The notes beneath the pieces were generated by a model. It was given only the letters and a program-made list of their open reading frames with translations, had not been told where the DNA came from and did no database searches. A program made the position numbers and the translations under genes. Below, piece by piece: positions 1 to 27,913 of a stretch of 64,000 nucleotides of DNA; position 1 is the stretch's first letter; every line of letters starts with the position of its first letter. Origin of the DNA: Macrostomum lignano (lineage: Eukaryota); NCBI GenBank assembly GCA_002269645.1, contig NIVC01001388.1, positions 62,001-126,000 of the forward strand. Reading direction: 5' to 3'.

Positions 1-3000
1 TCTCATGTCAACTTAAGGCTCTGGAATGGAGCCCGAAGTTCAGCTCCGGACCAAACCGACTGCAATCGATAACTTGTCGGCCCAGACGACTAGAATCGCC
101 GAGACATCCCATCCGGCTCCCTTCCTTGGGGTCCCAGGGGATAAAGGGGATAAAATGGGGATCTCATGTCAACTTAAGGCTCTGGAATGGAGCCCGAAGT
201 TCAGCTCCGGACCAAACCGACTGCAATCGATAACTTGTCGGCCCAGACGACTAGAATCGCCGAGACATCCCATCCGGCTCCCTTCCTTGGGGTCCCAGGG
301 GATAAAGGGGATAAAATGGGGATCTCATGTCAACTTAAGGCTCTGGAATGGAGCCCGAAGTTCAGCTCCGGACCAAACCGATGCAATCGATAACTTGTCG
401 GCCCAGACGACTAGAATCGCCGAGACATCCCATCCGGCTCCCTTCCTTGGGGTCCCAGGGGATAAAGGGGATAAAATGGGGATCTCATGTCAACTTAAGG
501 CTCTGGAATGGAGCCCGAAGTTCAGCTCCGGACCAAACCGACTGCAATCGATAACTTGTCGGCCCAGACGACTAGAATCGCCGAGACATCCCATCCGGCT
601 CCCTTCCTTGGGGTCCCAGGGGATAAAGGGGATAAAATGGGGATCTCATGTCAACTTAAGGCTCTGGAATGGAGCCCGAAGTTCAGCTCCGGACCAAACC
701 GACTGCAATCGATAACTTGTCGGCCCAGACGACTAGAATCGCCGAGACATCCCATCCGGCTCCCTTCCTTGGGGTCCCAGGGGATAAAGGGGATAAAATG
801 GGGATCTCATGTCAACTTAAGGCTCTGGAATGGAGCCCGAAGTTCAGCTCCGGACCAAACCGACTGCAATCGATAACTTGTCGGCCCAGACGACTAGAAT
901 CGCCGAGACATCCCATCCGGCTCCCTTCCTTGGGGTCCCAGGGGATAAAGGGGATAAAATGGGGATCTCATGTCAACTTAAGGCTCTGGAATGGAGCCCG
1001 AAGTTCAGCTCCGGACCAAACCGACTGCAATCGATAACTTGTCGGCCCAGACGACTAGAATCGCCGAGACATCCCATCCGGCTCCCTTCCTTGGGGTCCC
1101 AGGGGATAAAGGGGATAAAATGGGGATCTCATGTCAACTTAAGGCTCTGGAATGGAGCCCGAAGTTCAGCTCCGGACCAAACCGACTGCAATCGATAACT
1201 TGTCGGCCCAGACGACTAGAATCGCCGAGACATCCCATCCGGCTCCCTTCCTTGGGGTCCCAGGGGATAAAGGGGATAAAATGGGGATCTCATGTCAACT
1301 TAAGGCTCTGGAATGGAGCCCGAAGTTCAGCTCCGGACCAAACCGACTGCAATCGATAACTTGTCGGCCCAGACGACTAGAATCGCCGAGACATCCCATC
1401 CGGCTCCCTTCCTTGGGGTCCCAGGGGATAAAGGGGATAAAATGGGGATCTCATGTCAACTTAAGGCTCTGGAATGGAGCCCGAAGTTCAGCTCCGGACC
1501 AAACCGACTGCAATCGATAACTTGTCGGCCCAGACGACTAGAATCGCCGAGACATCCCATCCGGCTCCCTTCCTTGGGGTCCCAGGGGATAAAGGGGATA
1601 AAATGGGGATCTCATGTCAACTTAAGGCTCTGGAATGGAGCCCGAAGTTCAGCTCCGGACCAAACCGACTGCAATCGATAACTTGTCGGCCCAGACGACT
1701 AGAATCGCCGAGACATCCCATCCGGCTCCCTTCCTTGGGGTCCCAGGGGATAAAGGGGATAAAATGGGGATCTCATGTCAACTTAAGGCTCTGGAATGGA
1801 GCCCGAAGTTCAGCTCCGGACCAAACCGACTGCAATCGATAACTTGTCGGCCCAGACGACTAGAATCGCCGAGACATCCCATCCGGCTCCCTTCCTTGGG
1901 GTCCCAGGGGATAAAGGGGATAAAATGGGGATCTCATGTCAACTTAAGGCTCTGGAATGGAGCCCGAAGTTCAGCTCCGGACCAAACCGACTGCAATCGA
2001 TAACTTGTCGGCCCAGACGACTAGAATCGCCGAGACATCCCATCCGGCTCCCTTCCTTGGGGTCCCAGGGGATAAAGGGGATAAAATGGGGATCTCATGT
2101 CAACTTAAGGCTCTGGAATGGAGCCCGAAGTTCAGCTCCGGACCAAACCGACTGCAATCGATAACTTGTCGGCCCAGACGACTAGAATCGCCGAGACATC
2201 CCATCCGGCTCCCTTCCTTGGGGTCCCAGGGGATAAAGGGGATAAAATGGGGATCTCATGTCAACTTAAGGCTCTGGAATGGAGCCCGAAGTTCAGCTCC
2301 GGACCAAACCGACTGCAATCGATAACTTGTCGGCCCAGACGACTAGAATCGCCGAGACATCCCATCCGGCTCCCTTCCTTGGGGTCCCAGGGGATAAAGG
2401 GGATAAAATGGGGATCTCATGTCAACTTAAGGCTCTGGAATGGAGCCCGAAGTTCAGCTCCGGACCAAACCGACTGCAATCGATAACTTGTCGGCCCAGA
2501 CGACTAGAATCGCCGAGACATCCCATCCGGCTCCCTTCCTTGGGGTCCCAGGGGATAAAGGGGATAAAATGGGGATCTCATGTCAACTTAAGGCTCTGGA
2601 ATGGAGCCCGAAGTTCAGCTCCGGACCAAACCGACTGCAATCGATAAGTTGTCGGCCCAGACGACTAGAATCGCCGAGACATCCCATCCGGCTCCCTTCC
2701 TTGGGGTCCCAGGGGATAAAGGGGATAAAATGGGGATCTCATGTCAACTTAAGGCTCTGGAATGGAGCCCGAAGTTCAGCTCCGGACCAAACCGACTGCA
2801 ATCGATAACTTGTCGGCCCAGACGACTAGAATCGCCGAGACATCCCATCCGGCTCCCTTCCTTGGGGTCCCAGGGGATAAAGGGGATAAAATGGGGATCT
2901 CATGTCAACTTAAGGCTCTGGAATGGAGCCCGAAGTTCAGCTCCGGACCAAACCGACTGCAATCGATAACTTGTCGGCCCAGACGACTAGAATCGCCGAG

Positions 3001-3091
3001 ACATCCCATCCGGTTTCAAGTGACGAAGCTCTATTCTATTCGAATATCGCATTAGCGGGTGTATTTTATTTTAGCTATTATATATTGTTTG
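1..3091 (+). repeat. Left arm: about 18.7 near-identical 161-bp tandem units (1-3012) plus a ~79-bp inner unique segment (3013-3091)
   Basis: Period of 161 read from recurring ORF starts (26, 187, 348, then 508, 669... after a 1-bp deletion near 381). One substitution at 2648. The inner segment is the reverse complement of 6871-6949 with few mismatches. Confidence 0.97.
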
Positions 3092-3327
3092 CATTGTAAT
3101 ATTTCCGTCGTTTAATTTTTCCGGATTTTTGAGAATGTTTTCGCGGTTTTGATTTGACCACTTTAGGCGAGAGATTTTTGATACTGTGCGTCAAGTATTT
3201 GTAGCATTAGTTTAAGTGATATATTTTAAGTGATATATTAATGAAGTTAAGGTTTTGGTCAGTTTTTCTTACTTAGTTTTATGACAGGTGCAGATTTGTT
3301 GCAGATTGCGTTTTATACTTGCTAGTA

Positions 3328-6264
3328 ATGTCCGATTTTACTTGCTCTCAATGTGGTCATCAATTCAGCAAAGCAGCCAATTTGAACCGACATCTCGAAA
3401 CGACTAGATGTGGTCGCTGCTCATCTGAATCGTCTGGAGCCTTCGCGCCTCCGAGAAACGCACGAGAGGCGCTTCAGTTTCTTGCGGTCGGTGGTAAGTA
3501 TGTGAAAGTTTTTTTGAACCCAAACCTTTTTCCACGAACCGCAAATGAGAAGGAGTTCAAACGTATTTGCGGTCTTAGCTATAGTGATTTCGATAGCTTC
3601 TCAGAAATGTTACCAGAAGTATCTCGCCTTCGTATTTTGACAAAGCCATCTCGAATATTTTTGTACCTGAAGAAGCTTCGCCAAGGTTGCAGCTTTCAAT
3701 CATTAGCTTTCGATTTCAACATTTCTGCCCAAAGAGCAAGCGACATTTTTTGGGAGATTGCCAAGGAGCAGTACCTACGGGATCCATATCAACCGAGGTC
3801 GATAGCGTCGACTCCGATTCAGACTCTGCTTGAGGAAAATGTAGTACGCGATCAATTTATTCTCGGTGTATTTCACACACTACTCAAAGGCAAGAAGCTT
3901 GTTCTTCTAGTGGGTGATCATACTTACTTTTATCTCCCTAAGAGCAGCTCACACCACACGCAAATTCGAACTTACTTTTCCGGCAAGAAAATGAATGTGA
4001 ACAAAAAAATGGCGGTTGTCAACAGTAGAGGAAAAATTATCTACACCGCTCCCCTTACCGCCGCTATCTCGCCAACAATGGGCGATGGGAATTTGACTGC
4101 AATGCAAGTTGACATGGAGGCTGAAGGACTAATAGAGCCCACTTTGTTGCGCATTCTGTGCTCTGTACAGAAAGATTATCACGTTATTGGCATTTTCGAC
4201 AAAGGTTACAGCCACCAACTTTGTTCACCAACTTCGGTTAACTTCCGCGACTTTATAGAGACTAATAGTAAAGGCTGCACGACGCTTCTATTTCCGACCA
4301 GTCCAGGTGACCGAGTTCTAAACGAGCAGTTTGAATTTGTAAATAATGAGGCTCCTGTTGGTGACCGATCAATACCAGGAAAGCTTACATCAATCGAAGC
4401 AAATACAAGTCGCTGCGCTACGCTTTTCCGTTATCTCGTAGAATGTAGCTTTGCTGCAATCAAGCAGGACAAATGCATAAATGAGCGACAGGAGCCGTAC
4501 CAATGGCTACATGCCCCAGAGTTTACCGAACGCAGCCGGCTCGATGTTGTTATTGAAAACTCCATGGCAAAATTCAACCGTTCGCATCCAGGATTTCAAG
4601 CTACAAGGAGTCTGCCGCCGTCATGGTCAGATTGCTCCATGTTCGAATACGGACGGAACTTTGCTAAACGTCTTTTCATTGCGAATGAGCTAGACGAAAT
4701 TGAGCAACTTGAGTACAATTGCGATTTGACTCGAATACCAACGAGTTCTACCCGAAAATGGACAGCAGTGGATCCCCTGGACCCTGAAAGTTCAGGGTTC
4801 CCCAGCGTTGACGAAAGAAATCTGGAAGAGCTTAGCATCGGCCCATACCACGTTCTTCAGTCAAAACGCTACATCGAAAACGTCAGAGTTCATGAGGTGC
4901 TCAGTAGCTACGCTGGAGACTCGTGGCGCGATTTCGAATTGTTGATTTCTGAACTGCCAAGCCATTTAAAATGCTGGAAGTTTCATCAGCGAGCGCCACC
5001 AAAGGGGTGGAGCAGTAAGTTTGGAGAATGGAGGCCATCTTGGATATATTTAGCCGTTCTTCATTCCCGTCATCGGTCAAAAACTTACCGAGTTGTCCTT
5101 CGTATTTGCGAAACTGCAAGTGGTAACCGATTCGGATTTCGTGACTCGGGGCTGCTGCGTCTGCATGGCTACTTTTCATCCTCAAAGGCCGGAAGCAGGA
5201 CAGCAGGGTGTGACAGTCATGTTATGGCTGTGGTTAGAATGCTAGGCTGTTATGCATATCACCCCGAAAGCTACAACATGTGCGGCAGCAGCTTCCGATT
5301 TATTGACAGTGCTTTGCCAAAAGCACTGATTGCCAATCTTTACAATGATCAATCTGGTGGTCATCCAGCTCCAAATGCACCTCGCAGAGACAGTGCTGAA
5401 TCGCAGCAAGATGAACAGAGGCACAGTTCAAATGCTACTGGTTCATTGAATTCGCCGAAGAAGTTATTTGGGTTGCCAAATAATGGCCTGCAGTGCTACG
5501 CAAATGCAGCAGTGCAATTGTTTCTCTGCCTGCATTCTAATGGATGCATTTTAAAAGAGACTAGCAACGACCAAGTCCATCGAGAGCTGCTTCGTCTTCT
5601 GACGGAGATGCAACAGCGGTCTGCAACAGTCACTCCACTGTTAACGGCAGTTCGGTTGCAACATCCAGATTCATTTCAAACAAATCAGCACCATTGCGTC
5701 AACGAATTTGTTCAAACGCTTCTAATACATCTGGAATTTCTGTCATCAGATGCTTTCACAGAATTTTCACTCATTCAAACTTGTCGGGATTGCCAGCGCA
5801 CAAGTGCTGAAGTTCCTGTTGGCACAATCGATAACAGAGTGATTTGCATTCCTCTCTGTCAATTTGAGCGCTCAATTGTCAGTTTAGACAAAATCTTCTG
5901 CGCTTTTGTCGCTCCTCAGGTAGTGAAATGTTCGGACGCCAATTGCCTGGGCGATTGTAATCAAGAGATCGTAGTAACACCTGGAAAGTTTACCCTGATA
6001 TATCTTGATCGTGCTAGTATGGATGGCCACCTTAAGCTTCAAACTCCTGTAAGCTTTTCTTCAAGGTCAGGGGGTGTTTCTACACTTGGTAAGCCAGTGG
6101 CCACAATATCACACCATGGAAACCGACTGAAATCGGGACATTTCACAGCAAGCGTACTGAGCTGTGTGTGGACGAGAATTGACGACATGAAAGTTACGTC
6201 AGACTATAACCCGTTCGTACGTGAGCCTGAGTGCATCGTGCTCGTTGCACTTTTAAACTCGTAA
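3328..6264 (+). CDS. Transposase-deubiquitinase fusion (~978 aa): C2HC Zn finger, HTH, DDE_Tnp_4-like nuclease, degenerate SWIM-like motif, linker, USP/peptidase C19 domain
   Basis: First ATG at 3328. Zn finger CSQC-x12-H-x5-C. HTH-like IFLYLKKLRQGCSFQSLAFDFNIS. Catalytic-like D (GDHTY, 3916), D (FDKGY, 4198), E (RYLVECS, 4441). USP Cys box GLPNNGLQCYANAAVQ (Cys 5494), His box HHGNRLKSGHF (His 6139), WTRIDD (Asp 6181). No stops or frameshifts. Confidence 0.9.
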   Translation: MSDFTCSQCGHQFSKAANLNRHLETTRCGRCSSESSGAFAPPRNAREALQFLAVGGKYVKVFLNPNLFPRTANEKEFKRICGLSYSDFDSFSEMLPEVSRLRILTKPSRIFLYLKKLRQGCSFQSLAFDFNISAQRASDIFWEIAKEQYLRDPYQPRSIASTPIQTLLEENVVRDQFILGVFHTLLKGKKLVLLVGDHTYFYLPKSSSHHTQIRTYFSGKKMNVNKKMAVVNSRGKIIYTAPLTAAISPTMGDGNLTAMQVDMEAEGLIEPTLLRILCSVQKDYHVIGIFDKGYSHQLCSPTSVNFRDFIETNSKGCTTLLFPTSPGDRVLNEQFEFVNNEAPVGDRSIPGKLTSIEANTSRCATLFRYLVECSFAAIKQDKCINERQEPYQWLHAPEFTERSRLDVVIENSMAKFNRSHPGFQATRSLPPSWSDCSMFEYGRNFAKRLFIANELDEIEQLEYNCDLTRIPTSSTRKWTAVDPLDPESSGFPSVDERNLEELSIGPYHVLQSKRYIENVRVHEVLSSYAGDSWRDFELLISELPSHLKCWKFHQRAPPKGWSSKFGEWRPSWIYLAVLHSRHRSKTYRVVLRICETASGNRFGFRDSGLLRLHGYFSSSKAGSRTAGCDSHVMAVVRMLGCYAYHPESYNMCGSSFRFIDSALPKALIANLYNDQSGGHPAPNAPRRDSAESQQDEQRHSSNATGSLNSPKKLFGLPNNGLQCYANAAVQLFLCLHSNGCILKETSNDQVHRELLRLLTEMQQRSATVTPLLTAVRLQHPDSFQTNQHHCVNEFVQTLLIHLEFLSSDAFTEFSLIQTCRDCQRTSAEVPVGTIDNRVICIPLCQFERSIVSLDKIFCAFVAPQVVKCSDANCLGDCNQEIVVTPGKFTLIYLDRASMDGHLKLQTPVSFSSRSGGVSTLGKPVATISHHGNRLKSGHFTASVLSCVWTRIDDMKVTSDYNPFVREPECIVLVALLNS

Positions 6265-6870
6265 AAGCATTTTTAGCGAAAATACAATTGTTTTAAGCGA
6301 GTGTACTGTACGTTTTGTATTGCAGATTTTAAAGGACATGCAGATTAAGAAACAATGTCATCTCACGCATTCTTTACGTACCATAGGTTACATGTGAAGA
6401 TAATTCAGACTGACATCAAATAACAAAAGCTTTGAATTAGTTGTTTCAATTTCTTTTAGACTCACAATTAACTAAAAATTGGAAGTATTTTTTACTGAAG
6501 CAAAGAACTTAAACCCAAAAACCGTTTCTTAGGACTGAGAAACTTTTGCAATTATGATTTTACTAAGCTTTGCGTGAGAGGCGTTACTTTATTTGCTTAA
6601 AAACGTGTGCTGCTTTGCATGACATGCTTTGTTTTTATTACTTTGATAACTTGTACAGCTTTGCATGATATGCTTTGTATCCATTACGTCATAACTTGTA
6701 CAGCCTTGCGTGATATTCTTTATTTTACCAATATACATGGTTTCGGTTTATCGTCAAAAGTTCTGCTTACTAATAACCAAACGAATTTACAAGTTAATTT
6801 TTTCAAACTGAGTTTCCAGATCAGCATTTTTAACAGGTTTCGATACGAGCAAATCATTTTTATTACTTAA

Positions 6871-7546
6871 CAATCAATGTATAATAGCTGAAATAAAATA
6901 CACCCGCTAATGCGATATTCGAATTGAATAGAGCTTCGTCACTTGAAACCGGATGGGATGTCTCGGCGATTCTAGTCGTCTGGGCCGACAACTTATCGAT
7001 TGCAGTCGGTTTGGGCCGGAGCTGAACTTCGGGCTCCATTCCAGAGCCTTAAGTTGACATGAGATCCCCATTTTATCCCCTTTATCCCCTGGGACCCCAA
7101 GGAAGGGAGCCGGATGGGATGTCTCGGCGATTCTAGTCGTCTGGGCCGACAAGTTATCGATTGCAGTCGGTTTGGTCCGGAGCTGAACTTCGGGCTCCAT
7201 TCCAGAGCCTTAAGTTGACATGAGATCCCCATTTTATCCCCTTTATCCCCTGGGACCCCAAGGAAGGGAGCCGGATGGGATGTCTCGGCGATTCTAGTCG
7301 TCTGGGCCGACAAGTTATCGATTGCAGTCGGTTTGGTCCGGAGCTGAACTTCGGGCTCCATTCCAGAGCCTTAAGTTGACATGAGATCCCCATTTTATCC
7401 CCTTTATCCCCTGGGACCCCAAGGAAGGGAGCCGGATGGGATGTCTCGGCGATTCTAGTCGTCTGGGCCGACAAGTTATCGATTGCAGTCGGTTTGGTCC
7501 GGAGCTGAACTTCGGGCTCCATTCTGGTGCTTAAGTTGACATCCCC
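6871..7546 (-). repeat. Right arm: inner unique segment plus about 3.7 inverted 161-bp units and a variant terminal unit
   Basis: Reverse complement of the left arm. The outermost unit diverges (attctggtgcttaagttgacatcccc versus attccagagccttaagttgacatgagatcccc). Confidence 0.95.
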
Positions 7547-7990
7547 TTTGCAGTTTTTCGCCCAATACCAAATGTACGAGCCGAAATGGTCGCTCGAGAA
7601 CTGAAACGCCTATTTGGCCTTTTTGGCTGGCCTCGCATTCTTTTGAGTGATCAAGGCAGGGAATTCTGCAACTCCATCATCGAGGCTTTGCTACAGGAGG
7701 GCGGTACGGAAAGACGAGTAACGAGTGCCTACAATCCCCAGACAATGGACAAGCTGAGAGGCTAAACCAAACGTGCCTCAGCTTGCTTCGCAAGGTTTGC
7801 AACTCCCCAACTGACATTAATTGGGATCGGCCATCTGGACGCAATCCAACTTGCTTACAACAGCAGACGCAATCCAACGACCCTGGCTTCGCCTTCCAGT
7901 GCTGTTTTTATGCGTCTACCATTGCGCTGTACCAATGGAGTACATCTGAAGCGATGCAGGACGCAGGCCCAACCTTATACTCGTAGTCGA
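7547..7990 (+). pseudogene. Retroviral-type (rve) integrase fragment, probably a Gypsy remnant, interrupted by the DNA transposon
   Basis: Reading from 7547 gives FAVFRPIPNVRAEMVARELKRLFGLFGWPRILLSDQGREF...TSAYNPQT, then frameshifted AERLNQT and IQLAYNS-like motifs. Confidence 0.85.
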
Positions 7991-9114: not shown

Positions 9115-9485
9115 AAACAGCAAGCAAACTGGAGAGTTGGAGAGAATGAAACACCATGAAATATTCTAAAAAAAATTGATAGCGTTCCCTGATACTCGAG
9201 ATCGACTTCTGTTGAAGGAATCAAATTATCCGAATTTCTATTCTTTGGAAACGTTAAATTAACTTTTCAATTAAGTTTAATTGATTTGAGTTCATAAAAT
9301 TCTAGAAAGAACAATTTTGTTTTTTTCAAGAGAATTTTTCATACTTTTTTTTAAAAAGAAATAAAATAAGACACAGACAGCCTGTCTCATATTTAAATTT
9401 TACTTTCTGAAAAAAACTATGTCTACGTTTCTTTGTTTCTATCACAGAGAGTAATTGTAAATTTTTGCAGAAATATTGTCCGTGG

Positions 9486-10263
9486 ATGTCAGGGGATTCG
9501 GAGTGAATGTCAGGAGAGATTCACAGTGAATGTCAGGAGAGATTCGGAGTGAATGTCAGAAAAGATTCGGAATGAATGTCAGGAGAGATTCACAGTGAAT
9601 GTCAGGAGAGATTCGGAGTGAATGTCAGGAGAGATTCACAGTGAATGTCAGGAGAGATTCACAGTGAATGTCAGGAGAGATTCACAGTGAATGTCAGGAG
9701 AGATTCACAGTGAATGTCAGGAGAGATTCACAGTGAATGTCAGGAGAGATTCACAGTGAATGTCAGGAGAGATTCACAGTGAATTTCAGGAGAGATTCGG
9801 AGTGAATGTCAGGAGAGATTCAGAGTGAATGTCAGTAGAGATTCGGAGTGAATGTCAGGAGAGATTCGGAGTGAATGTCAGGAGAGATTCGGAGTGAATG
9901 TCAGGAGAGATTCGGAGTGAATGTCAGGAGAGATTCACAGTGAATGTCAGGAGAGATTCGGAGTGAATGTCAGGAGAGATTCACAGTGAATGTCAGGAGA
10001 GATTCAGAGTGAATGTCAGGAGAGATTCACAGTGAATGTCAGGAGAGATTCACAGTGAATGTCAGGAGAGATTCACAGTGAATGTCAGGAGAGATTCACA
10101 GTGAATGTCAGGAGAGATTCACAGTGAATGTCAGGAGAGATTCACAGTGAATGTCAGGAGAGATTCACAGTGAATTTCAGGAGAGATTCGAAGTGAATGT
10201 CAGGAGAAATTCGGAGTGAATGTCAGTAGAGATTCACAGTGAATGTCAGGAGACATTCAAGTG
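9486..10263 (+). repeat. 23-bp minisatellite (GGAGTGAATGTCAGGAGAGATTC and CACAGTG variant)
   Basis: Period 23 read directly (ATTC at 9841, 9864...). About 33 units. Confidence 0.95.
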
Positions 10264-10533: not shown

Positions 10534-13500
10534 ATGATCGTCAAATTGCTAAACAATGTCACAAACCTCACGCAGCAAATTAGTAAGTTACCGCCGCCCA
10601 GTACAGCGTTGGCCAAATGGCTCACAGCCCAATTCCAACTAGATCAAGCTAACCTGTCTAGGGCTCAACTCACCACCGCATTAAAATTGCTCAACTACTT
10701 CAACAGCCAAATCTCTAGATCAAACACAGATTTAGGCCACACCACCCTGCACGAGATGGGTATAGAGCTAATAGATCCAAAATCCAAGCCCATTGCGCAG
10801 CCGTCTAGACGCACTACTCCAGCTCAAAAGGAGTTCTTAGACCAACATGTAGCCCAGATGCTCGAACAGGGGGTCATCGAAGAATGTGACTCCGACTGGG
10901 TGTCACCCATTGTCTTAGTCAAAAAGAAGGATGGCACTCAGCGCCTGTGCATAGATTACAGGGCTGTCAACAAGCTCATCAAGCCATGCAGTTACCCTCT
11001 GTCACTCATTGAGGAATCCTTTGATAGCCTTGCTGGGGCCACCGTATTCTCTAGCCTGGACCTGACATCTGCGCACTGGCAGGTAGGGATCAAGGAGGAG
11101 GCTAGGGATTACATCGCCTTTGCCTGCCCCCAAGGTACATTCCGTTGGAAGGTGGTACCGTTCGGGATCAAGACGGCGCCTGCCAACTTCGCCAAACTCA
11201 TGCACAAGGTATTCAGGCCCCTCCTGATGAAGGTCAGCCTCATTTACCTAGATGACATTATCATCAAGGCAGTCAACAATGACCAGATGATCGCGCACCT
11301 CGCGCTGGTCCTCTGGCAACTTAGAAAAGCCGGTCTCAAAATTAAACCGTCCAAGTGTGAGCTGTTTAAGGACAAGGTCTCCTTTCTGGGCTTTGTTGTG
11401 TCTAGCCGGGGCATTGAAGCCGACCCAGCAAAGACTCAGGCCGTTCAAGATTGGCCTAAGCCGCTTTCTAAGAAACAGCTCTTATCATTCTTGGGATTCG
11501 CGAATTTACCGAAAATTTGTGCCGCGATTCTCTATCATCACCACACCAAGAAGGAAGCCCCGTTCCTATGGCAACCGCATCACGAACGGGCTTTCCAGGA
11601 ACTCAAAAGTAATCTCTGCTCACCACCAATTCTGGCATATCCAGACCTCTCTGCCAAAGGGCGCGAATTTATCTTGGACTGCGATAGCTCTCTAGACGGC
11701 ACAGGGGGTGTGCTGAACCAGCTAGGGCCAGATGGCCAAGAGCAAGTTATAGCTTACGCATCCAAGAAGTTCAATAGTAGTCAGAGGAACTACTGCGCCA
11801 CCATGAGGGAGTTGCTGGGGCTCGTCCTGATGCTCGAGCACTTCCGTCCTTATCTATTAGACAAGCCTTTCACTGTCCGGGTAGACGCAGCTGCGCTCAA
11901 ATGGCTGCATTCTAAGAAGCATGCCACTGGTATGCTGGCTCAGTGGCTCGCCACTATTGAACTGTATCCACTGAAGGTCCAACAGTCCACTCTGGAACGA
12001 ATAGCAGAGTATGATTTCACCGTCCAGTACCGTCCAGGCGTTGATCACGTGCCTGCGGACGCCCTCAGTAGACTAACAAAGTTCAGAGCTGACCACTTCG
12101 ACTGCCCGACATGTAGTCAGATTCCGGAATTCAAGAGGAAGTTCCTAGATCAGGATTCTAAGGCACGCCGTAAACCGCCCACTGGGGAATTGCGGCAGGT
12201 GAGCGTCCAGAACACGGGCAAAAGTGTCGCGTGTCAGACTGACGCCGATAGTAGCCTTTCACCATCACAGCCACCCCGGCCAAGGGCAGCCCCGGTGCCC
12301 GAGGAGGCGCCAAGAGTCACTATGGCTAAACCATCGCCAAATGTCCGCGCTGCTGCTAGTAGTGCTGATCACAGTCCAAGGACTGAATTCCTTGAGCCTG
12401 AAGCAGGACTTCAAGTGCCACCTGAACTCATCTGGGCCCAGAATGCCCAGGACTCCTGTGTTGACATGGCGCGCTTAATTGCCAGTGTCCAGGGTAAGGC
12501 CGAGCCATTGTCCAAGGCCGAGCTGCAGAGCTGTAACCGGGAAATACGCACACTCTGGGCTCAAATCAACAACCTCGAAGTTATTGAAGGCCTCCTGTAC
12601 CTAGTCAGACCTTCAAAAACCAAGACAGCCAATAGACGTCTTGTAGTGCCTGAAACTGCAGATGTCAGCCACCTGGTCCTCCAGTATCATGGCCAGCTGA
12701 ATCACTGCGGCATCACCAAGACGATGTCCGCCCTGAAGGCGCGCTTCGCCATTTCCGACTTAGATACTATTGTCAAGGGGGGTCCTGGCCGAATGCACCG
12801 TTTGCGCCAAGACTAAGAAGTCAAAGCGTAAGCTCAAGGCCCCTATGCAACCAGAACTGTCCGGCTACCCGAACCAGGTTGTCCACGTGGACCACGCAGG
12901 CCCGTTTGAAGAGTATGACGGGTACAAGTACCTGCTGGTTATGATTGACCGGTTCACCGGGTTTGTAGAAGTCGTCCCTGTCCCCGATGTCAGTGCTGAG
13001 ACCACTGCCACCTCCATCCTGACTGAATGGATTGCCAGGTATGGGGTGATGGAGCAGCTGGTATCTGACAACGGGACCGCCTTCATCAACAGTACGATGA
13101 CAGAATTGACTAGACTCTTACAAATTGACATGGGTCGGATCACAGCCCGCCGTCCTCAGGCTAACGGTAAAGCTGAGAGGATGATCCAGACGGTGAAGGC
13201 CCAGGTTAGAGCCATCTGTCTTGAGAGGCAATGCGATTGGCCTCTTGCCAGCCGGCTGGCCGCCATGTCAATTCGTGCCACGATTGCAGAATCCACCAGA
13301 TTTACTCCAGCCAAACTTTTCTTCGGGCGTGAGTTCGAATTACCACTCGACCTCTGTCATAACCCACCGCCCAATGAGCACTATCAGCCGGAGAGGTACG
13401 CGCACCAATTGCATCGGACTTTAGTCGAAGCCTCTGCCTTAGCCCGCCGCACTAGGGGCAAAGCCCAGGAAAGGCAGAAGAGGTATTACGACCGCCGCGC

Positions 13501-14272
13501 CCTCCGCGCTGAGTTCCACGAAAGGGAATTAGTCTGGGTCTTGAACCCGAATCACAAAGGCATCGAACCCGCTGTGTGGTTGGGGCCATACCGAGTAGTG
13601 CAGCGCTGCTCAGAGCGGACTTACCGTTTGGTCCCAGAGTACGGACTCCTAAACCCAGCAGATCGAGTGCCAAATCCGCGCCACAACATTTATAACATTG
13701 ACCGTCTCAAGCCGTGCATCAGACAGCCCACCTACCAAGATGTGATTGACAGGTATGGTGAGGCAGTCCATGCCAGATCTTCACCACCTCCTAGTGACAG
13801 CCACAGCAAATCCACAAACGAGCCCAGCCTCGTAACCATCCACCAGCCTCCCTCTGCCCGGCCAGGAAGCCCAAACAGAGAATCAGAGCCTAAGCCACCA
13901 TCGCCAGCTTCAGGCGCTTCTGAGGAGGAGGCGGGAGCTGGAGCTGGGGAGGAACAGCCAATCGCTGAAGCCGACGATGCTGTAGCCATTGAAGGACATG
14001 CCAGCGCTGACAGAATCAACACCGACACTAGCCACAGCCAAGAGAGCTCGGAATCGCTCCACACAGCTTCTCTGGGGGACTTTTCCCTGCCAGCCTCCGA
14101 ACCAATAGAGCGACCCGAGCCTGTTGCGAACCCAGCCGCCGCGCAAGCGGTGGGTCCACCAGCCCCAGCCGCGGAACCTAGGTCTAGGTACGGGCGCCCC
14201 ATCCACCCGCCCGTCAGGTACCGGACTTGTCAGGTGTCCGACCTGCTCCAGCAGTGGGGAAGCAAGCACTAA
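10534..14272 (+). pseudogene. pol: Gypsy A pol, disrupted
   Basis: RT LIYLDDII, RNase H LDCDSS and NYCATMRELL, integrase H-H/CTVC, VSDNGTAF, ANGKAERM. Compensating frameshifts at about 11505-11545 (the correct YRKFVPRFSII lies in another frame). An extra G in a G run at 12777-12782 splits the two ORFs. Confidence 0.9.
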
Positions 14273-16807: not shown

Positions 16808-19800
16808 TCAACCGGCCACATAGCGATCCACCGGCATCCGCCTACGCACCGGGTAGCGTCTCGGGGGCGGCTCCTCGTCCGCCTCATCGCCGCCGTGCGC
16901 CGCGTGCGCAAAGGGCGGCTGCAGGAAGCGCTCTCCGTCAGGGACTGGCAGGATCCGCGGCCGCAGACGATTCACATTCACCCTGCGGGTCCGGCCGTTC
17001 TCGATCTTTTGGATTTCGACTACCAGATCCCGCTGCGACAGCACCTGCCAGCCCGGCTCCCAGTAAGGCGCCAGCTTGGAGCCCCTCAGCTCGATGCGCA
17101 GCAGGACCTCGTCTCCAGGACTGAACATGCGCAGCTGCCCGGTCGACCTGTCGTAGCCGCTCTTTTGCTCGCCAGCCGCCTGCACCAGATGCTCCTCGAC
17201 AAACTCTCGAATTCGCAGCAGGTCGCCCTCGAGCTTGTCGGCGTAGGTGCGCACGTCATAGAATCGCCTGGACTGCTGGCTGATGACCGGCAGGCTCGGA
17301 TCGCGCCCGGTGAACACCTTCAGTGGCGGCAGCTGTGTTGAGCAGTGCACCCGGGAATTGTAGGACAGCAGGATCAGTGGCAGCTTGTCCTCCCACTCGC
17401 TCTCTCGCTCGGTGAAACACCTGAGTAACTGCAGCACTGACTTGTTGCCCGACTCCGTTGCCTTTGGGATTATAAGCCGTTGTTCTTGTCTTCGTGACTC
17501 CCAGGCCTCGCAGAGTGTCTTGAAAAAGCTGAGACTCGAAATTCGGTCCTTGATCGGAGTGGATGACTCGGGGAAGTCCAGTCTGGGAGCAGATGGAGAG
17601 GAAGGCGCGAGCAGTAGTCTCAGCAGTCTGGTCAGGAATCGCCACGGCCGTCAGGTACTTGGAAAACTGATCCTGAGCCACCAGCAGGTATTTGTTGCCG
17701 CGCGATGATGGCGCCACCTTGACGATGTCGATAGCCACAGAATCCCACGGCGAGCCGATTGGCAGTTCTCCGAGTGGCGCGCTGGTCCGCGAGCCCGCTT
17801 TCTTCTCCTGACAGACAGAACAACTCTGGCAGTGTTGCACGATGTCTTCAGCCATGCCGGGCCAGTAGGCGGTCAGTTTCAGTGTGCGGTAGCATTTCTC
17901 GGCTCCGAAATGACCTCCCAGACCTTCGTGAGCGTTGGTCAAAAACTGTTGTCGAAGCCGCGCTGGCACCACTGGAACCTCCCGCAGGCCGTCCGGGTCA
18001 TTGAACTTGCGCAGTAGAACACCGTCATCATCCAGCTTCAGCTTCTTCCAGATTCTGCCGAGTTGCTGCAGTGGTCCTGCTCGCCATCTGGGTGCAATTT
18101 CTGCGTCCTTGTCCATCGCCTGAATCACCTGGCTGAGCTCCGGGTCATGTCGCTGCGCAGTTTTGAGCTCTTCAGTGTCGATTTCCGGAGTCAGCTGCGT
18201 AGCTGCGACTTCTTGGCCGTGCAGTCTGGACAGCGCGTCAGCATCTGAGTTCTCAACGCCTCTTCGGTACTTGACGGTGAAGTCGAACTCTTGAAGCAGC
18301 AGACGCCATCGTCCTAGCCTGCCGTAGCTGTCAACTCTCTGTGAATCGATGTAGGTGAGCGGGCAGTGATCCGTGTGCACCGTGAAATGCTTGCCGAGAA
18401 GATAGTGGCGAAAAACTTTGAATGCGTGCAGGATGGCCAGGCACTCCTTTTCTGTTGCAGAGTATTTCTTCTCAGCTGAATTGAATGCGCGGCTTGAGAA
18501 CTCGATCACCGCCTCGCCTTGCTTGAGAATTGCACCGACTCCGCTGCCACTGGCATCCGTGAAGACTGAGAACTCCTTAGTGAAATCCGGGTTCACCAGG
18601 ATCGGAGGACTAATTAGGCACCTTTTGAGCTCGTCGAAGGCCGTCTGGCATTCCGAAGTCCAGTCAAATGGAACGCCCTTGCCAGTCAGATGGTGCAGCG
18701 GTGCGGCGATGGCAGCGAAGTTGGCTACATGGCGTCGGTATTGGTTGCACAGGCCGATGACCTGACGCACCTCCTTGGCTGACCTCGGCTCTCTCCACTG
18801 CTGAATTGCCTCCAGCTTCTCCTGGCTGGGCTGGGCACCATCCTTTGAATACCGTGTGCCGAGAAAGGTCACTTCGGGTACCGCGATCTTGCACTTGGAG
18901 CCTCTTAATGTCAGTCCGGCTGCTCGAAGTCGCTCGAAGGTCTCTCGAAGTTGCCGCAGATGATCCGACTTGGTCTTTGAGAAGCACAGGCTGTCATCGA
19001 AGAACGTGAAGATGAAATCGCAGCCGTTGAAAACTTTTGACATTAGCATGCAGAATGTGCTTGGGCCCCCCGACAGACCTTGGGGCATTCTCTTAAATTG
19101 GTACAGCGGCATCCCTGGTCCCGGACAGAAAGCAGTTTTTAGCTTGTCTTCTTCTGCCATCGGAATTTGAAAATAGCCTCCATTGAGATCCAACACAGAG
19201 AACACTGAACTGCCTGCGATTCGATCTCTTGCCTCCTCCATCAACGGAATTCCCTGTGCAGAGCGAATAGTCTTCTTGTTGATCTCTCGATAGTCTATGG
19301 TCAGGCGGAGACTGCCATCCTTCTTTGTCACGTACACCGGTGGGGCCACGTACGGACTTTCGCTCAGCTCTATTACGTCGTTCTCCAGCAGTTCCTGAAT
19401 CAGCTGCTCTACCTTCTCCCGGTAATGCACAGGCATTCGGCGCGGTGGCACTCGGACAGGTACTTCATCCGAGAGAACAATTCGGTGCTGTTGCAGATGA
19501 GTTAGTCCCGGCTTTTTCTTGAACAAGTCTTTGAACTCCACCAGCAGCGGTTGTACATCAGGGTCGTCGGTAGTCGGCAACTCGAACTCCTCACAGCTGA
19601 ACTCGGGGACGAGTGCGTCTTCGATGTCAACTGGATCGTCGGTGTCAGCCTGGAATCTGGTGCTGCAGACTTGGCCAAATTATGCTTGCCGATGAAGTCG
19701 ACTCCAACAATGACAGGGCAGACCAAACCTGACACAACGAAAAACAATTGCCGGGCTGTCACTCCACCGACTGTAAGTGGCAAATCGATTTGCCGTTCTA

Positions 19801-20101
19801 TGCTAATTGGCTGCTTGTTCACTGAATGAAGTTGCACTCTGGCTGCAGTTGCCTGTCTGAGCTGGGATTTTGTCAGGATGCTGGACTCAACTAGTGAGCA
19901 CTGGCTTCCGGTGTCTAACAGCGCCTTCACACTTCTGCCATCAAGCTTGCACTCACACTGCGATAGTCGGTCGGGCGCGACGCTGCATCCGTCGAAGATC
20001 CCGCCGACAGTGAGCGCCGGCCTTGAAGCCGCTGCTGCTGGGCCCGCAGTTACTGCTGGCCGGGGTTGCGGGCCCGCACACCCCAGCCTCTGGCGTTTCC
20101 C
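16808..20101 (-). pseudogene. pol: Gypsy B pro-pol with two frameshifts
   Basis: Protease LLDTGS, RT TFFDDSL, RNase H TDASGSGVG, integrase HEGLGGH...CQSC, SDQGPNF, AYNPKGNG. Frame breaks at about 19660 and 17450. Confidence 0.9.
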
Positions 20102-20859
20102 GGCTGTCGCCTGCTGTAGCAATCTCTGGCAATGTGGCCGGCCTTGTGGCAGTTGTAGCAGATGATGTCAGACTTCGAACGGTGCTGCGGTCTCGTTGTG
20201 CTACTCGTCCTCACTCCACAGGCTGCCAGCTGCTGCAGCTGGGAACTCAGGGTGCTCACCGATGCCTGCAGACTCTGCACAGTGTCCCGCAGCTCCTGAA
20301 ACTCGCTGGATTGGCTCGACTGAGGTTGCACCGCTGCTGCTGGGATGCTTGGCGAGCTGTGCTGCATCAGTAGCTGGGCCTTTTGAAGCGCTTGCTCTGA
20401 GGTCTTAACGCTGGAATCCGCGCGAATCTGCCAGCTCACGGATTCGGGAAGGCCACAGACGAACTGATGGAACAGCAGAGCCTCTTGAGCATCTTTGTTG
20501 TCCACGGAGGAGCTTTTGAGCATCTTCTTTAACTCGTAAAGATACATGCGTGGAGTCTCATTCGACAAAATCTTCCTTGATTTGAACGCCTCCATGACGG
20601 CGAAGTGCTCGCGGTTCGGGTGGAATGCATCATCCAATGCCTGGACTACTTTGTCGTAGTCTGCCTGATCTCCTGCCGACAGTTCCAAATAAACGACGAG
20701 AGCCTCGCCATCCAAAAATGTGGCCAGTCGCTCCGCTTTGCACGTGTCCCACTTGTTGACTTTTGCGCATACATTGAAACGCTGCAGCCATTCCTTAAAG
20801 TTGCCGGTACTGAAAACTCTGGGCAGCGCTGCACTGGCGGTCAAACCTTTCTCAGCCAT
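20050..20859 (-). CDS. gag: Gypsy B Gag (269 aa)
   Basis: ATG 13 nt after the PBS. C-terminal zinc knuckle CYNCHKAGHIARDC. Confidence 0.9.
   Translation of the reverse strand: MAEKGLTASAALPRVFSTGNFKEWLQRFNVCAKVNKWDTCKAERLATFLDGEALVVYLELSAGDQADYDKVVQALDDAFHPNREHFAVMEAFKSRKILSNETPRMYLYELKKMLKSSSVDNKDAQEALLFHQFVCGLPESVSWQIRADSSVKTSEQALQKAQLLMQHSSPSIPAAAVQPQSSQSSEFQELRDTVQSLQASVSTLSSQLQQLAACGVRTSSTTRPQHRSKSDIICYNCHKAGHIARDCYSRRQPGNARGWGVRARNPGQQ
20058..20101 (-). promoter_or_regulatory. Programmed -1 ribosomal frameshift signal (gag to pro)
   Basis: In-frame slippery heptamer G GGA AAC (20101-20095), 6-nt spacer, then hairpin GGCTGGGGT-G-TGCGGGCCCGCA-ACCCCGGCC. A -1 shift enters the protease frame (GKRQRLG). 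Confidence 0.8.
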
Positions 20860-25200: not shown

Positions 25201-25800
25201 TGCAGCAGGATGTAACCCAGTTCGTCCAGCGCTGCCCAGGCTGTTGCCACTTGCGACCTCGCTTGGGAAATGACAGGGACCATTGGCCGGCAGCTTCGTA
25301 CCCGTTTCAACGTATCCATATGGACTGGGCCTACGTGAAGGACGCTGGTAACATTCTAGTCATCGTTGAAACATTTTCTGGCTGGGTAGAGGCATTCCAT
25401 TGGCCTTGTCGGAATGGAACTGGCGAATCAGTTATGCAGTGCTTGCGCGCAGTGTTCGCACGCTTTGGAGTGGCCGAGCTGGTAGTGTCCGATAATGCAC
25501 CAGAGTTCATCGGTGATCCCCTCTACTCTCTTGGCTACGGGCCAATGGTGTCCATAAACTTGAATCGCCAGCTTATTATCCACAGGCAAACGGAGTGGCC
25601 GAAAGCACTGTACAGACGGTCAAAGCTGCACTGCGCGCGTGGTCAGAGAGAATTACGCACATAGTCTTCAGCCATTTTCTGCAGAAAGTGCTGCTCCATC
25701 ATCGGAACTCAGTATCGTCGCGGGGGCAATGCCCGGCCGAGATACTGTTCGGCAGAAAGCTCAGAGTGTTTTGTTTGGGACACCGTAGAAACAGACACAA
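22283..25800 (+). mobile_element. Decayed Gypsy element C (Mag-like gag-pol), many stops and frameshifts
   Basis: Gag with paired knuckles CCYCGRSH...CPAYGKTCMKCGK, protease VDTGAS (~23270), RT IYQDDILV, RNase H TTDAS, integrase HDTHSG...CPGC and VSDNAPEF. LTRs not identified. Confidence 0.88.
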
Positions 25801-26019
25801 GATCAGTTGCTTGACGTGAAGATGCCAGCGGGCGCATATTTGCTCAAGAATAAAAGAAGGGCAGAGGCTCTTCTTGAGCTTGCACCAATTATCATATATA
25901 TGGTTTCAACCATAGACTAAATTCTTAGCAGATGGATCAAAACGCAAGTGCATGCAAATATGTTACACCCCCAACAATGCCAAAAGAAGACTGTCATGCA
26001 TTGTAAAGGCGTGCAGGTG

Positions 26020-27740: not shown

Positions 27741-27745
27741 CCCAT

Positions 27746-27913
27746 TCTATGGATGAATAATCTAACCGGATCGCCAGAAGCTCGATTTTTATATAAGCAA
27801 TATATGCAGGGTGAAAGTACGGCATTCTGAGCTTCTTGTGATGCTGGTGCTTGTCTATGGCTAAGACCAAAAAAATCGAGCTTCTGGCGATCCAGTTATA
27901 TTATTCATCCATG
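27746..27913. mobile_element. MITE candidate (~168 bp) with ~44-bp inverted repeats
   Basis: ATGGATGAATAATCTAACCGGATCGCCAGAAGCTCGATTTTT (27749-27790) is inverted at 27871-27912 with 2 mismatches. GCCCAT is present on both flanks (27740-27745, 27914-27919). Confidence 0.6.

What the first reader, a model, noticed from the sequence alone, without database searches (positions are those of the whole stretch)
3328..6264. DDE transposase fused to an apparently active USP-family deubiquitinase
Seen: one uninterrupted ORF inside inverted arms carries D/D/E-like residues (3916, 4198, 4441). It also carries a compact ~260-aa domain with USP hallmarks: GLPNNGLQCYANAAVQ, an EF box, CRDC and CSDANC pairs, LIYLDR, HHG...SGHF and W-x3-DD. 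Known: DNA transposons carry Ulp1/SUMO proteases (Mutator-like elements, Zisupton, Ginger) or OTU proteases (Dada, Ginger). I do not recall a peptidase C19 fused in frame to a PIF/ISL2EU/Spy transposase, but I cannot search to confirm that. Inference: the element may deubiquitinate itself to avoid degradation, or act on chromatin (H2A/H2B ubiquitin) or repair factors at the integration site, which would make it a transposon-encoded counter-defence.
Basis: partly seen in the sequence, partly recalled or inferred. Interest (0 to 1): 0.92.

Follow-up and report, generated by a model that had tools for sequence, protein, structure and literature searches.

The report
DNA transposon with built-in deubiquitinase domain
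A jumping gene in this repeat-rich eukaryotic DNA encodes one protein joining a cut-and-paste transposase to a small, apparently working ubiquitin-removing enzyme; related elements in marine samples share this design, which adds a new case to the known habit of transposons carrying ubiquitin-system proteases.

Summary
Window 3328-6264 (+) is one 978-aa ORF between long inverted arms. Its first 671 residues are a PIF/Harbinger-ISL2EU-Spy (PHIS, DDE_Tnp_4-type) transposase with D197, D291 and R368-x3-E372. Residues 713-963 are a compact USP (peptidase C19) domain. It scores above the Pfam gathering score, has an intact Asn718/Cys723/His938/Asp953 set and a four-Cys zinc ribbon, and its AlphaFold model (pLDDT 92) matches USP2, USP18 and USP46.

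The fusion is not a one-off. At least nine protein clusters (50% identity level) from marine and other metagenomes carry the same transposase plus a USP. In one multi-copy family the USP is under purifying selection (dN/dS about 0.4). The module is variable: it is C-terminal in most lineages, internal in one, replaced by a Ulp1 protease in one, and absent in close relatives.

The idea is not wholly new. A Trichomonas transposase-C19 fusion was mentioned in 2010, UCH domains were reported in Helentrons in 2024, and OTU, Ulp1 and VTD proteases are known in other transposons. I rate it a new variant of a known kind.

What the deubiquitinase does for transposition is untested. One relative has a ubiquitin-tail LRLRGG at an ORF1-transposase junction, which hints at polyprotein processing.

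The parts
1..3013 (+). Left arm: tandem array of a 161-bp unit, at least 18.7 copies, running off the left edge of the window. There is a phase break at 381/382.
   Evidence: Tandem Repeats Finder; inverted-repeat pairs with 6949-7524 at 98-100%. The left terminus was not found in the window.
3014..3101 (+). Inner, non-tandem part of the left inverted arm
   Evidence: 80/88 identical to the reverse complement of 6861-6948
3102..3327 (+). AT-rich leader (3014-3327 is 31.5% GC) with a 14-bp direct repeat at 3211-3239; presumed promoter / 5' UTR
   Evidence: The promoter role is inferred.
3328..6264 (+). Single 978-aa ORF: zinc finger, transposase, linker and USP
3337..3414 (+). N-terminal C-x2-C-x12-H-x5-C zinc finger (aa 4-29), a remnant of the ORF1-like zinc-finger protein of related elements
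   Evidence: Weak Pfam zf-C2H2 hit; conserved in P0001; homologous to L009 ORF1 aa 42-85, E = 2.6e-5
3496..3840 (+). N-terminal helical DNA-binding module of the transposase (aa 57-171), including an HTH_Tnp_4-like stretch at aa 104-142
   Evidence: Pfam HTH_Tnp_4 22.6 bits, below the gathering score of 27; family HMM E = 3e-39; all-helical in the model
3889..4599 (+). DDE catalytic core (aa 188-424): D197, D253 (GDGNL), D291, R368-x3-E372
   Evidence: Alignments A1 and A4 show these columns invariant or at least 90% conserved. Relatives hit Pfam DDE_Tnp_4 at 32-79 bits. The model has the mixed beta/alpha core. Best PDB fold match is Tn5 transposase, and it is weak.
4636..5340 (+). Conserved C-terminal transposase domain (aa 437-671) ending in a SWIM-like C-x-C...G-x-R...C-x-H motif. 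In this copy the first Cys positions are Ser (aa 617-619), while C628 and H631 are kept.
   Evidence: Family HMM E = 3e-80; weak Pfam SWIM hits in relatives; alignments
5344..5463 (+). Low-complexity linker rich in Ser, Gln and Pro (aa 673-712), containing NDQSGG and SPKK
   Evidence: The transposase model drops below pLDDT 50 in its last residues (model 643-646, about aa 682-685). The first four residues of the USP model (aa 705-708) are below 50.
5464..6216 (+). USP / peptidase C19 catalytic domain (aa 713-963): Asn718, Cys723, zinc ribbon C819/C822/C868/C873, His938, Asp953
   Evidence: Pfam UCH 37.5 bits; profile vs PDB USP2 E = 2.7e-36; AF2 pLDDT 92.3; Foldseek hits to USP2/USP18/USP46/USP35; conserved columns
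6265..6860 (+). AT-rich 3' non-coding region (32% GC) with a 45-bp tandem repeat at 6612-6726
6861..7545 (-). Right arm: inner unique segment (6861-6948) plus 3.7 inverted copies of the 161-bp unit. The element ends at about 7543-7550.
7547..7762 (+). Right flank (not part of the element): fragment of an rve-type retroelement integrase (…DQGREFCNS…SAYNPQ…), the apparent insertion target
   Evidence: Translation. The integrase call is by motif recognition, from my own knowledge.

Best explanation
The locus is a DNA (cut-and-paste) transposon of the PHIS superfamily (PIF/Harbinger-ISL2EU-Spy, DDE_Tnp_4-type), belonging to a deep 'long-transposase' clade. Its single gene encodes a bifunctional protein.

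The N-terminal part has a zinc finger, a helical HTH module, a DDE core (D197, D291, E372) and a conserved SWIM-like C-terminal domain. This part would bind the repeat-laden inverted arms and carry out excision and integration. A flexible linker tethers a minimal USP-type cysteine deubiquitinase (Cys723, His938, Asp953) of about 250 aa.

Shown here: the domain identities, intact catalytic residues, a confident USP fold, recurrence of the fusion in many diverged relatives, and purifying selection on the USP in one relative family.

Inferred: the USP is enzymatically active and is delivered by the transposase to the place of transposition. There it removes ubiquitin (or a ubiquitin-like modifier) from the transposase itself, from chromatin, or from break-repair factors, which raises the element's transposition success.

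The USP is an accessory module, not a core requirement. Sister lineages lack it, carry it at another position, or carry a Ulp1 protease in its place.
For: ORF and residues.

USP identity: Pfam UCH above the gathering score; profile vs PDB USPs E = 2.7e-36; AF2 pLDDT 92.3 / pTM 0.90; Foldseek USP2/USP18/USP46/USP35 TM 0.73-0.77; catalytic and zinc-ribbon columns invariant or at least 90% conserved.

Transposase identity: phmmer against 1.84 billion representatives gave 131 hits. Relatives hit DDE_Tnp_4 at 32-79 bits and HTH_Tnp_4. D, D and R-x3-E columns are conserved, matching the PHIS signature in PMC4122938. The transposase model has pLDDT 90.7.

Recurrence of the fusion: the window protein, P0006, P0010, P0021, P0033, P0047, P0068/P0183, P0083/P0191/P0193/P0195, and P0017/P0201. 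Two clusters have 20 mostly intact members each.

Selection: in the P0010 family dN/dS is 0.11-0.16 for the transposase and 0.38-0.47 for the USP in the most divergent pairs, with P = 0.002-0.03 against neutrality.

Co-inheritance: the USPs of P0195, P0183, P0047 and P0021 form a 100% bootstrap clade that mirrors transposase clade A.

Mobile-element context: inverted arms and insertion into an integrase ORF.

Same slot, different protease: P0110 has Ulp1 C-terminal to the same transposase.

Precedent for transposon DUBs being active: Helentron VTD domains (PMC9741609).
Against: The window protein itself gives no Pfam DDE_Tnp_4 hit, and its HTH_Tnp_4 hit is below threshold.

The left end lies outside the window, so terminal repeats and target-site duplication cannot be read. 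I could not resolve them in any relative either.

Only one copy is present in the window, and no copy-number or transcript data exist for the host.

The nearest relative (51% identity) is a decayed copy on a contig that ends before any USP.

The first Cys residues of the SWIM-like motif are lost in this copy, so transposase competence is not assured.

Selection on the USP is weaker than on the transposase and was measured in a relative family, not in this lineage.

Close relatives do well without any USP.

No enzymatic or substrate evidence exists. Catalytic geometry could not be measured because model coordinates are not exposed.
Confidence: 0.6

Rival explanations
1. The USP is mainly a processing protease for the element's own products, as coronavirus papain-like protease (a USP-fold enzyme) cleaves LxGG sites in the viral polyprotein. 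In this reading it cuts after a Gly-Gly site to separate protein modules: ORF1-like protein from transposase, or transposase from USP. Deubiquitination of host proteins would be secondary or absent.
For: In the P0188/P0191/P0192/P0193 family, the exact ubiquitin tail LRLRGG sits 19 residues before the transposase module, at the junction with an N-terminal region homologous to the separate ORF1 of L002. This hexamer is expected only 0.007-0.014 times by chance in all the sequence fetched. ORF1 is separate in some lineages and fused in others, so a fused lineage would benefit from cleavage. The window protein has NDQSGG in the transposase-USP linker. The PLpro analogy is from my own knowledge.
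Against: LRLRGG occurs in one family only. No ubiquitin-like domain is detectable upstream of it (Pfam; BLAST vs ubiquitin E = 0.14), and USPs normally need the ubiquitin body. The window's SGG is not conserved in its nearest relatives (QSAAEF in P0006 and L001). Families whose ORF1 is a separate gene (P0010, P0033) still keep the USP. Fused lineages P0003/4/5 have no USP at all.
Confidence: 0.15
2. The USP fold is kept as a ubiquitin- or ubiquitin-like-binding module, or is otherwise catalytically silent. It would recruit the transposase to ubiquitinated chromatin or repair foci rather than removing ubiquitin.
For: The QQDAxEF ubiquitin-tail box has diverged to NQHHCVNEF in this subfamily. 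The domain is unusually small: about 250 aa against about 335 aligned residues in USP2. It lacks an insertion of about 40 residues that USP2 has between the LL..L helix and the zinc ribbon.
Against: Asn718, Cys723, His938 and Asp953 are all present, and these columns are conserved in every full-length fusion lineague examined despite only 19-35% overall identity. Pseudo-enzymes usually lose at least one of these residues.
Confidence: 0.1
3. The USP is a passenger: a host USP gene fragment captured by the transposon (transduplication) and carried along without contributing to transposition.
For: Transposons often capture host gene fragments; PMC11417382 discusses this for Helitron-like elements. 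The module is dispensable in close relatives. Its position varies between lineages.
Against: There is an in-frame fusion with intact catalytic residues in at least nine diverged clusters. dN/dS is significantly below 1. The USP clade is congruent with the transposase clade. A neutral passenger would have decayed over such divergence.
Confidence: 0.08
4. The locus is not a live transposon. It is either a host gene domesticated from one, or a dead single relic whose long ORF survives by chance of youth.
For: Only one copy is in the window. Only one close relative was found in very large public collections. The SWIM-like Cys residues are lost.
Against: Long, 98-100% identical inverted arms flank the gene. 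It sits inside a retroelement integrase in a repeat desert with no host genes. Related families are clearly multi-copy, with many intact members in many samples.
Confidence: 0.07

Closest known systems
Trichomonas vaginalis XP_001314237.1 (transposase_11, pfam01609, plus Peptidase C19), mentioned in Bao, Kapitonov & Jurka 2010 (PMC2836005), which cites Gladyshev & Arkhipova 2009
   Same: An IS4/IS5-related DDE transposase joined to a peptidase C19 (USP) domain. Distant members of the present family also hit pfam01609.
   Different: It is known only as a one-sentence remark, and the cited source could not be read here. I could not obtain its sequence, so homology to this family is untested. No NCBI-sourced protein appeared in the 20 clusters whose sources I looked up.
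Ginger1 transposases with C-terminal OTU or Ulp1 protease domains; Mutator-like elements with Ulp1 (PMC2836005)
   Same: A cysteine protease of the ubiquitin / ubiquitin-like system is fused in frame C-terminal to a DDE transposase. The protease type can be swapped (OTU vs Ulp1 there; USP vs Ulp1 in P0110 here).
   Different: The transposase superfamily differs (retroviral-integrase-like or Mutator vs PHIS). The protease clan member differs (C85 or C48 vs C19).
Helentron / HLE2 rolling-circle transposons carrying OTU, VTD and UCH domains (PMC9741609, PMC11417382)
   Same: Transposon-encoded deubiquitinases. The VTD domains were shown to be active. The Pfam UCH domain is reported as stably included in two HLE2 subgroups.
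   Different: Those elements use a RepHel rolling-circle protein, not a DDE transposase.
PIF/Harbinger, ISL2EU and Spy transposons (PHIS superfamily; PMC4122938, PMC4482050)
   Same: DDE_Tnp_4-type catalytic core with D...D...R-x3-E, an HTH upstream, and inverted termini. Many encode a second DNA-binding protein.
   Different: There is no Myb/SANT ORF (Harbinger), and no THAP domain or YqaJ ORF (ISL2EU). The partner protein here is a C2H2 zinc-finger protein, either separate or fused. The D2-E spacer is longer (81 aa vs about 35-53). There is a large extra C-terminal domain. Neither paper mentions a ubiquitin protease.
Cellular USPs with minimal catalytic cores (USP2, USP18, USP46/12, USP35)
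   Same: Same fold and catalytic residues; these are the best structural matches.
   Different: Sequence identity is 15-19%. The domain is about 250 aa against about 300-340 aa. The protein context is a transposase rather than a host regulatory protein.

Membership tests
Peptidase C19 / USP (Pfam UCH, PF00443) | Significant match to the family profile | tested here: met
   37.5 bits vs gathering score 23.9, aa 715-958; family profile vs PDB USP2 E = 2.7e-36
Peptidase C19 / USP (Pfam UCH, PF00443) | Cys box with the catalytic Cys and the oxyanion Asn five residues upstream | tested here: met
   GLPN(718)NGLQC(723)YANAAVQ; both columns at least 90% conserved in fusion proteins
Peptidase C19 / USP (Pfam UCH, PF00443) | His box with the catalytic His, plus the downstream Asp/Asn | tested here: met
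   SGH(938)F and W-x3-D-D(953); G-H invariant and Asp at least 90% conserved
Peptidase C19 / USP (Pfam UCH, PF00443) | USP fold (thumb, palm, fingers) with a four-Cys zinc ribbon in the fingers | tested here: met
   AF2 pLDDT 92.3; Foldseek USP2/USP18/USP46 TM 0.73-0.77, probability 1.0; C819, C822, C868 and C873
Peptidase C19 / USP (Pfam UCH, PF00443) | Isopeptidase activity on ubiquitin or a ubiquitin-like modifier; triad geometry | not testable with these tools
   This needs enzyme assays. Model coordinates are not exposed for distance measurement.
PHIS superfamily DDE transposase (Pfam DDE_Tnp_4, PF13359) | Significant sequence homology to DDE_Tnp_4 proteins | tested here: met
   There is no direct Pfam hit for the window protein. 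However, phmmer links it to P0007 (E = 3.7e-57) and to P0062/P0063/P0072 (E about 1e-8 to 3e-7 in a 1.84-billion library), and these score 32-79 bits on DDE_Tnp_4.
PHIS superfamily DDE transposase (Pfam DDE_Tnp_4, PF13359) | Catalytic signature D...K...D...D...P...R-x3-E (PMC4122938) | tested here: met
   D197, D253, D291 and R368-x3-E372 are conserved across 36 family members. The D291-E372 spacer (81 aa) is longer than the published range.
PHIS superfamily DDE transposase (Pfam DDE_Tnp_4, PF13359) | Terminal inverted repeats | tested here: inconclusive
   Long inverted arms are present, but the left terminus is outside the window.
PHIS superfamily DDE transposase (Pfam DDE_Tnp_4, PF13359) | Target-site duplication: 3 bp in Harbinger, 2 bp in ISL2EU, none in Spy | not testable with these tools
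   The left flank is absent. Relatives' contigs do not span whole elements.
PIF/Harbinger proper | Second ORF encoding a Myb/SANT protein | tested here: not met
   The element has no second ORF. Relatives' second ORF is a C2H2 zinc-finger protein.
ISL2EU proper | THAP domain on the transposase and a YqaJ-exonuclease ORF (PMC4482050) | tested here: not met
   No THAP or YqaJ hit in the window protein or in the relatives scanned
Spy | Single-ORF element inserted in AAATTT without a target-site duplication | tested here: inconclusive
   The single-ORF criterion is met in the window. The insertion site cannot be read, and relatives have two ORFs.
Transposases carrying a ubiquitin / ubiquitin-like cysteine protease (Ginger1-OTU/Ulp1, MULE-Ulp1, Helentron-OTU/VTD/UCH) | Protease domain in frame with, or stably linked to, the transposition protein and conserved across family members | tested here: met
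   Fusion in at least nine clusters; dN/dS below 1; Ulp1 in the same slot in P0110

The most novel reading that the evidence does not exclude
A whole clade of PHIS DNA transposons, apparently widespread in marine eukaryotes, depends on an in-built minimal USP. The enzyme would have a double life like viral papain-like proteases. It would process the element's own ORF1-transposase polyprotein at ubiquitin-tail-like (LRLRGG / xGG) sites. It would also strip ubiquitin from host chromatin or break-repair factors at the transposition site. That would make it a transposon-encoded counter-measure against ubiquitin-based host control.
Probability: 0.15. Interest if true: 0.8.

Novelty: new variant of a known kind. 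Interest (0 to 1): 0.58.

Why it matters
Transposons of several unrelated superfamilies have independently acquired proteases of the ubiquitin / ubiquitin-like system: Ulp1, OTU, VTD, and now USP on a PHIS transposase. No role in transposition has been shown for any of them.

This family offers an intact, compact, single-ORF example, plus multi-copy relatives with a naturally varying module (present, moved, swapped for Ulp1, or absent). That makes it a clean system for asking what deubiquitination does for a cut-and-paste transposon.

It also adds one of the smallest USP catalytic domains seen, which is of interest for USP structure-function work. The single-protein transposase may also be of interest as a tool.

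Tried and rejected
- **Word-indexed protein search.** The full protein found only P0001, and the fusion profile A3 found only P0001 and P0002. This was uninformative; the exhaustive HMMER search was what worked.
- **DNA-pattern scans.** I scanned JGI metagenome contigs twice, GTDB genomes once and IMG/VR once. None gave a confirmed locus. Profile A3 was too diverse to make patterns.
- **Element ends.** The window's left terminus is off-window. The P0033-family contigs agree on a left boundary near '|ATACTATAATG', but none reaches the right end. L008, L009, L014-L018 show no terminal inverted repeats.
- **Transposase fold.** The transposase model vs PDB gave no convincing match; the best was Tn5, E = 0.02. 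The A4 profile vs PDB sequences hit only USPs, because whole fusion proteins were in the alignment.
- **Ubiquitin-like domain upstream of LRLRGG in P0193.** No Pfam hit, and BLAST vs ubiquitin gave E = 0.14.
- **First dN/dS run.** It was distorted by indels in P0140 and was redone on a codon alignment.
- **Gladyshev & Arkhipova 2009.** The paper could not be read.
- **Other checks.** Rfam found nothing in the window. The host organism was not identified.


Full report
**Observation.** Window 3328-6264 (+) is one uninterrupted 978-aa ORF. All quoted motifs are present. The ORF lies between long inverted arms. A 161-bp unit is repeated at least 18.7 times at 1-3013, where the array runs off the window. 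It is repeated 3.7 times in inverted orientation at 6949-7542. An inner non-tandem inverted segment lies at 3014-3101 / 6861-6948. The right arm ends at about 7545, against a fragment of an rve-type integrase ORF. The rest of the window is retroelement ORFs and satellites with no Rfam hit. The setting is therefore repeat-rich eukaryotic DNA, and the element is inserted into another mobile element. It is the only copy in the window.

**The C-terminal domain is a USP.** Pfam UCH (PF00443) matches aa 715-958 at 37.5 bits against a gathering score of 23.9. A profile of this domain and its relatives hits solved USP catalytic domains, with USP2 at E = 2.7e-36. An alignment-guided AlphaFold2 model of aa 705-978 is very confident (pLDDT 92.3, pTM 0.90). 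Its best PDB matches are all USP cores: USP2, USP18, USP46/12, USP21 and USP35, with TM 0.73-0.77 and probability 1.0. The oxyanion Asn718, catalytic Cys723, His938 and Asp953, and the four zinc-ribbon cysteines (C819, C822, C868, C873), are in place. Their columns are invariant or at least 90% conserved among relatives that share only 19-35% identity. The domain is small, about 250 aa against about 335 aligned residues in USP2. Its QQDAxEF box has diverged to NQHHCVNEF.

**The N-terminal two-thirds is a PHIS-type transposase.** The window protein gives only a sub-threshold HTH_Tnp_4 hit and no DDE_Tnp_4 hit. An exhaustive phmmer search of 1.84 billion representatives returned 131 relatives. 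Local iterated HMMs resolve three conserved modules: a helical N-terminal module (aa 57-171), the DDE core (188-424) and a C-terminal domain (437-671). P0007 (E = 3.7e-57) passes DDE_Tnp_4. More distant members (P0062, P0063, P0072, P0093, P0104, P0110) score 53-79 bits on DDE_Tnp_4, and also hit HTH_Tnp_4, DDE_Tnp_1 and, weakly, SWIM. D197, D253, D291 and R368-x3-E372 are conserved across 36 members. They fit the PHIS signature published for PIF/Harbinger, ISL2EU and Spy (PMC4122938), except for a longer D-to-E spacer. The transposase model is confident (pLDDT 90.7) but has no close solved analogue. Its best match, a weak one, is the IS4-family Tn5 transposase. The defining accessories of Harbinger (Myb ORF) and ISL2EU (THAP, YqaJ ORF) are absent. 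I therefore place the element in PHIS but in none of its named groups. The SWIM-like C-x-C...G-x-R...C-x-H motif has lost its first cysteines in this copy and in its nearest relative.

**The fusion is recurrent and selected.** Transposase plus USP occurs in the window protein, P0006, P0010, P0021, P0033, P0047, P0068/P0183 and P0083/P0191/P0193/P0195, and in a different order in P0017/P0201. That is at least nine clusters at the 50% identity level. All come from metagenome or SRA assemblies, several of them Tara Oceans samples. Two clusters have 20 members each, mostly full-length and intact. The P0033 family recurs at about 99.5% DNA identity on contigs from several samples. In the P0010 family a Nei-Gojobori analysis on a codon alignment gives dN/dS of 0.11-0.16 for the transposase. 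For the USP it gives 0.38-0.47 in the most divergent pairs, with P = 0.002-0.03 against neutrality. In neighbour-joining trees, USP-bearing lineages fall in two of the three supported subclades of the long-transposase clade, mixed with USP-less lineages. The USPs of P0195, P0183, P0047 and P0021 form a 100% clade matching their transposases, so in that clade the module has been co-inherited for a long time. Deeper USP nodes are unresolved. One old gain with losses and repeated gains cannot be told apart.

**The module is accessory and interchangeable.** The closest USP-less families (P0003, P0004) have no USP remnant in any frame on their contigs. P0201 has the USP between an ORF1-like zinc-finger region and the transposase. 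P0110 carries a Ulp1 (Peptidase_C48) domain in the same C-terminal slot. Related elements encode a C2H2 zinc-finger ORF1 upstream of the transposase. In other lineages the homologous region is fused to the transposase N-terminus. The window protein retains only the zinc finger.

**Mechanism.** What is shown is a transposase and a USP with all catalytic residues, joined by a disordered linker, conserved together. What I infer is that the USP is active and that the DNA-bound transposase brings it to the site of transposition. There it would remove ubiquitin from the transposase, from nucleosomes, or from break-repair factors. This is the same kind of role proposed, without proof, for Ulp1 and OTU in Ginger and Mutator elements (PMC2836005). 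It was also proposed for the enzymatically active VTD domains of Helentrons (PMC9741609).

An alternative arose from a relative. The P0188/P0191/P0192/P0193 family has the exact ubiquitin tail LRLRGG 19 residues before the transposase module, at the ORF1-transposase junction. The motif is expected only about 0.01 times by chance in all the sequence fetched. This suggests USP-mediated polyprotein processing in that lineage. Support for this in the window element is weak. Its only linker Gly-Gly (NDQSGG) is not conserved in the nearest relatives, no ubiquitin-like domain is detectable upstream of LRLRGG, and families with a separate ORF1 keep the USP.

**Comparison with what is known.** Transposon-borne proteases of the ubiquitin system are an established theme. 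For C19 specifically I found two precedents. The first is a one-sentence mention of a Trichomonas vaginalis protein with transposase_11 plus Peptidase C19 (PMC2836005; the cited source was not readable). The second is the Pfam UCH domain as a stable component of two Helentron subgroups (PMC11417382). The two PHIS survey papers do not mention any ubiquitin protease, and full-text searches for the combination returned nothing else. None of the 20 relative clusters whose sources I looked up carries an NCBI or UniRef accession or name. I could not query Repbase, Dfam or InterPro.

**Verdict.** The claim of unprecedented architecture is overstated. The functional proposals are untested. I class the finding as a new variant of a known kind, of moderate to good interest. 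It is an intact, compact, experimentally tractable example, with natural present, moved, swapped and absent variants of the protease module.

**Limits.** The element ends and target-site duplication are unknown. The host is unknown. There are no copy-number or expression data. Selection was measured in a relative family only. No enzymatic evidence exists.

Noticed in passing
P0188/P0191/P0192 aa 257-262 and P0193 aa 297-302 (relatives, not in the window): The exact ubiquitin C-terminal tail LRLRGG sits at the junction of the ORF1-like N-terminal region and the transposase module, in a family that also carries the C-terminal USP. It is expected about 0.01 times by chance in all the sequence fetched. 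It may be a self-processing site.
   Followed up: partly
P0110 (733 aa, Logan assembly): The same transposase superfamily (HTH_Tnp_4 + DDE_Tnp_4 + C-terminal domain) carries a Ulp1 / Peptidase_C48 domain (aa 566-706) in the slot where the window protein has its USP.
   Followed up: partly
P0201 (924 aa) and P0017: The domain order is different: C2H2 N-terminal region, then USP (aa 265-502), then HTH and DDE. The USP can therefore lie upstream of the transposase. Its His box reads SSHY rather than GHY.
   Followed up: partly
L009-L013 (P0010 family CDS): Synonymous divergence in the USP part (dS 0.10-0.12) is about half that in the transposase part (0.17-0.25) in the same sequence pairs. This hints at recombination or module exchange between sublineages.
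   Followed up: no
window 5176-5184 (aa 617-619); L001 frame 0, near 2790: The first cysteine positions of the SWIM-like motif, conserved in at least 90% of the family, are Ser-Ser-Ser in the window protein and its 51%-identical relative. Zinc binding by this motif is probably lost in this subfamily.
   Followed up: partly
window 1-3013 vs 6949-7542: The two arms are strongly asymmetric: at least 18.7 vs 3.7 copies of the 161-bp unit. There is a phase break at 381/382. The left array may have expanded like a satellite after insertion.
   Followed up: no
window 10534-14272 (+), 16808-20859 (-), 22283-25664 (+), 55913-56830 (+): There are several Ty3/gypsy-like retroelement ORFs (protease / RT / RNase H / integrase, gag with a CCHC knuckle). 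Two have long intact pol ORFs of 760 + 500 aa and 774 aa, suggesting recent activity. They were identified by motifs only.
   Followed up: no
window 26000-28000: This is a GC-rich island (65.5% GC). An ORF at 26347-27114 (-) contains a GDLNAHHPAWD-type motif, typical of the apurinic-endonuclease domain of non-LTR retrotransposons.
   Followed up: no
window 9482-10263; 30793-37540; 43080-43772; 48987-49622; 62637-63992: There are large blocks of short-unit tandem repeats: a 23-bp unit repeated 34 times at 9482-10263, arrays several kb long at 30.8-37.5 kb with strong GC skew, and others. They give long spurious ORFs in several frames.
   Followed up: no
L002 1568-2932; L009 202-1944: Related elements encode an upstream ORF1 (454 and 580 aa) with C2H2 zinc fingers, instead of the Myb/SANT (Harbinger) or YqaJ (ISL2EU) partner proteins. 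It is homologous to the N-terminal extensions fused to the transposase in P0003/4/5, P0047, P0193 and P0201.
   Followed up: partly
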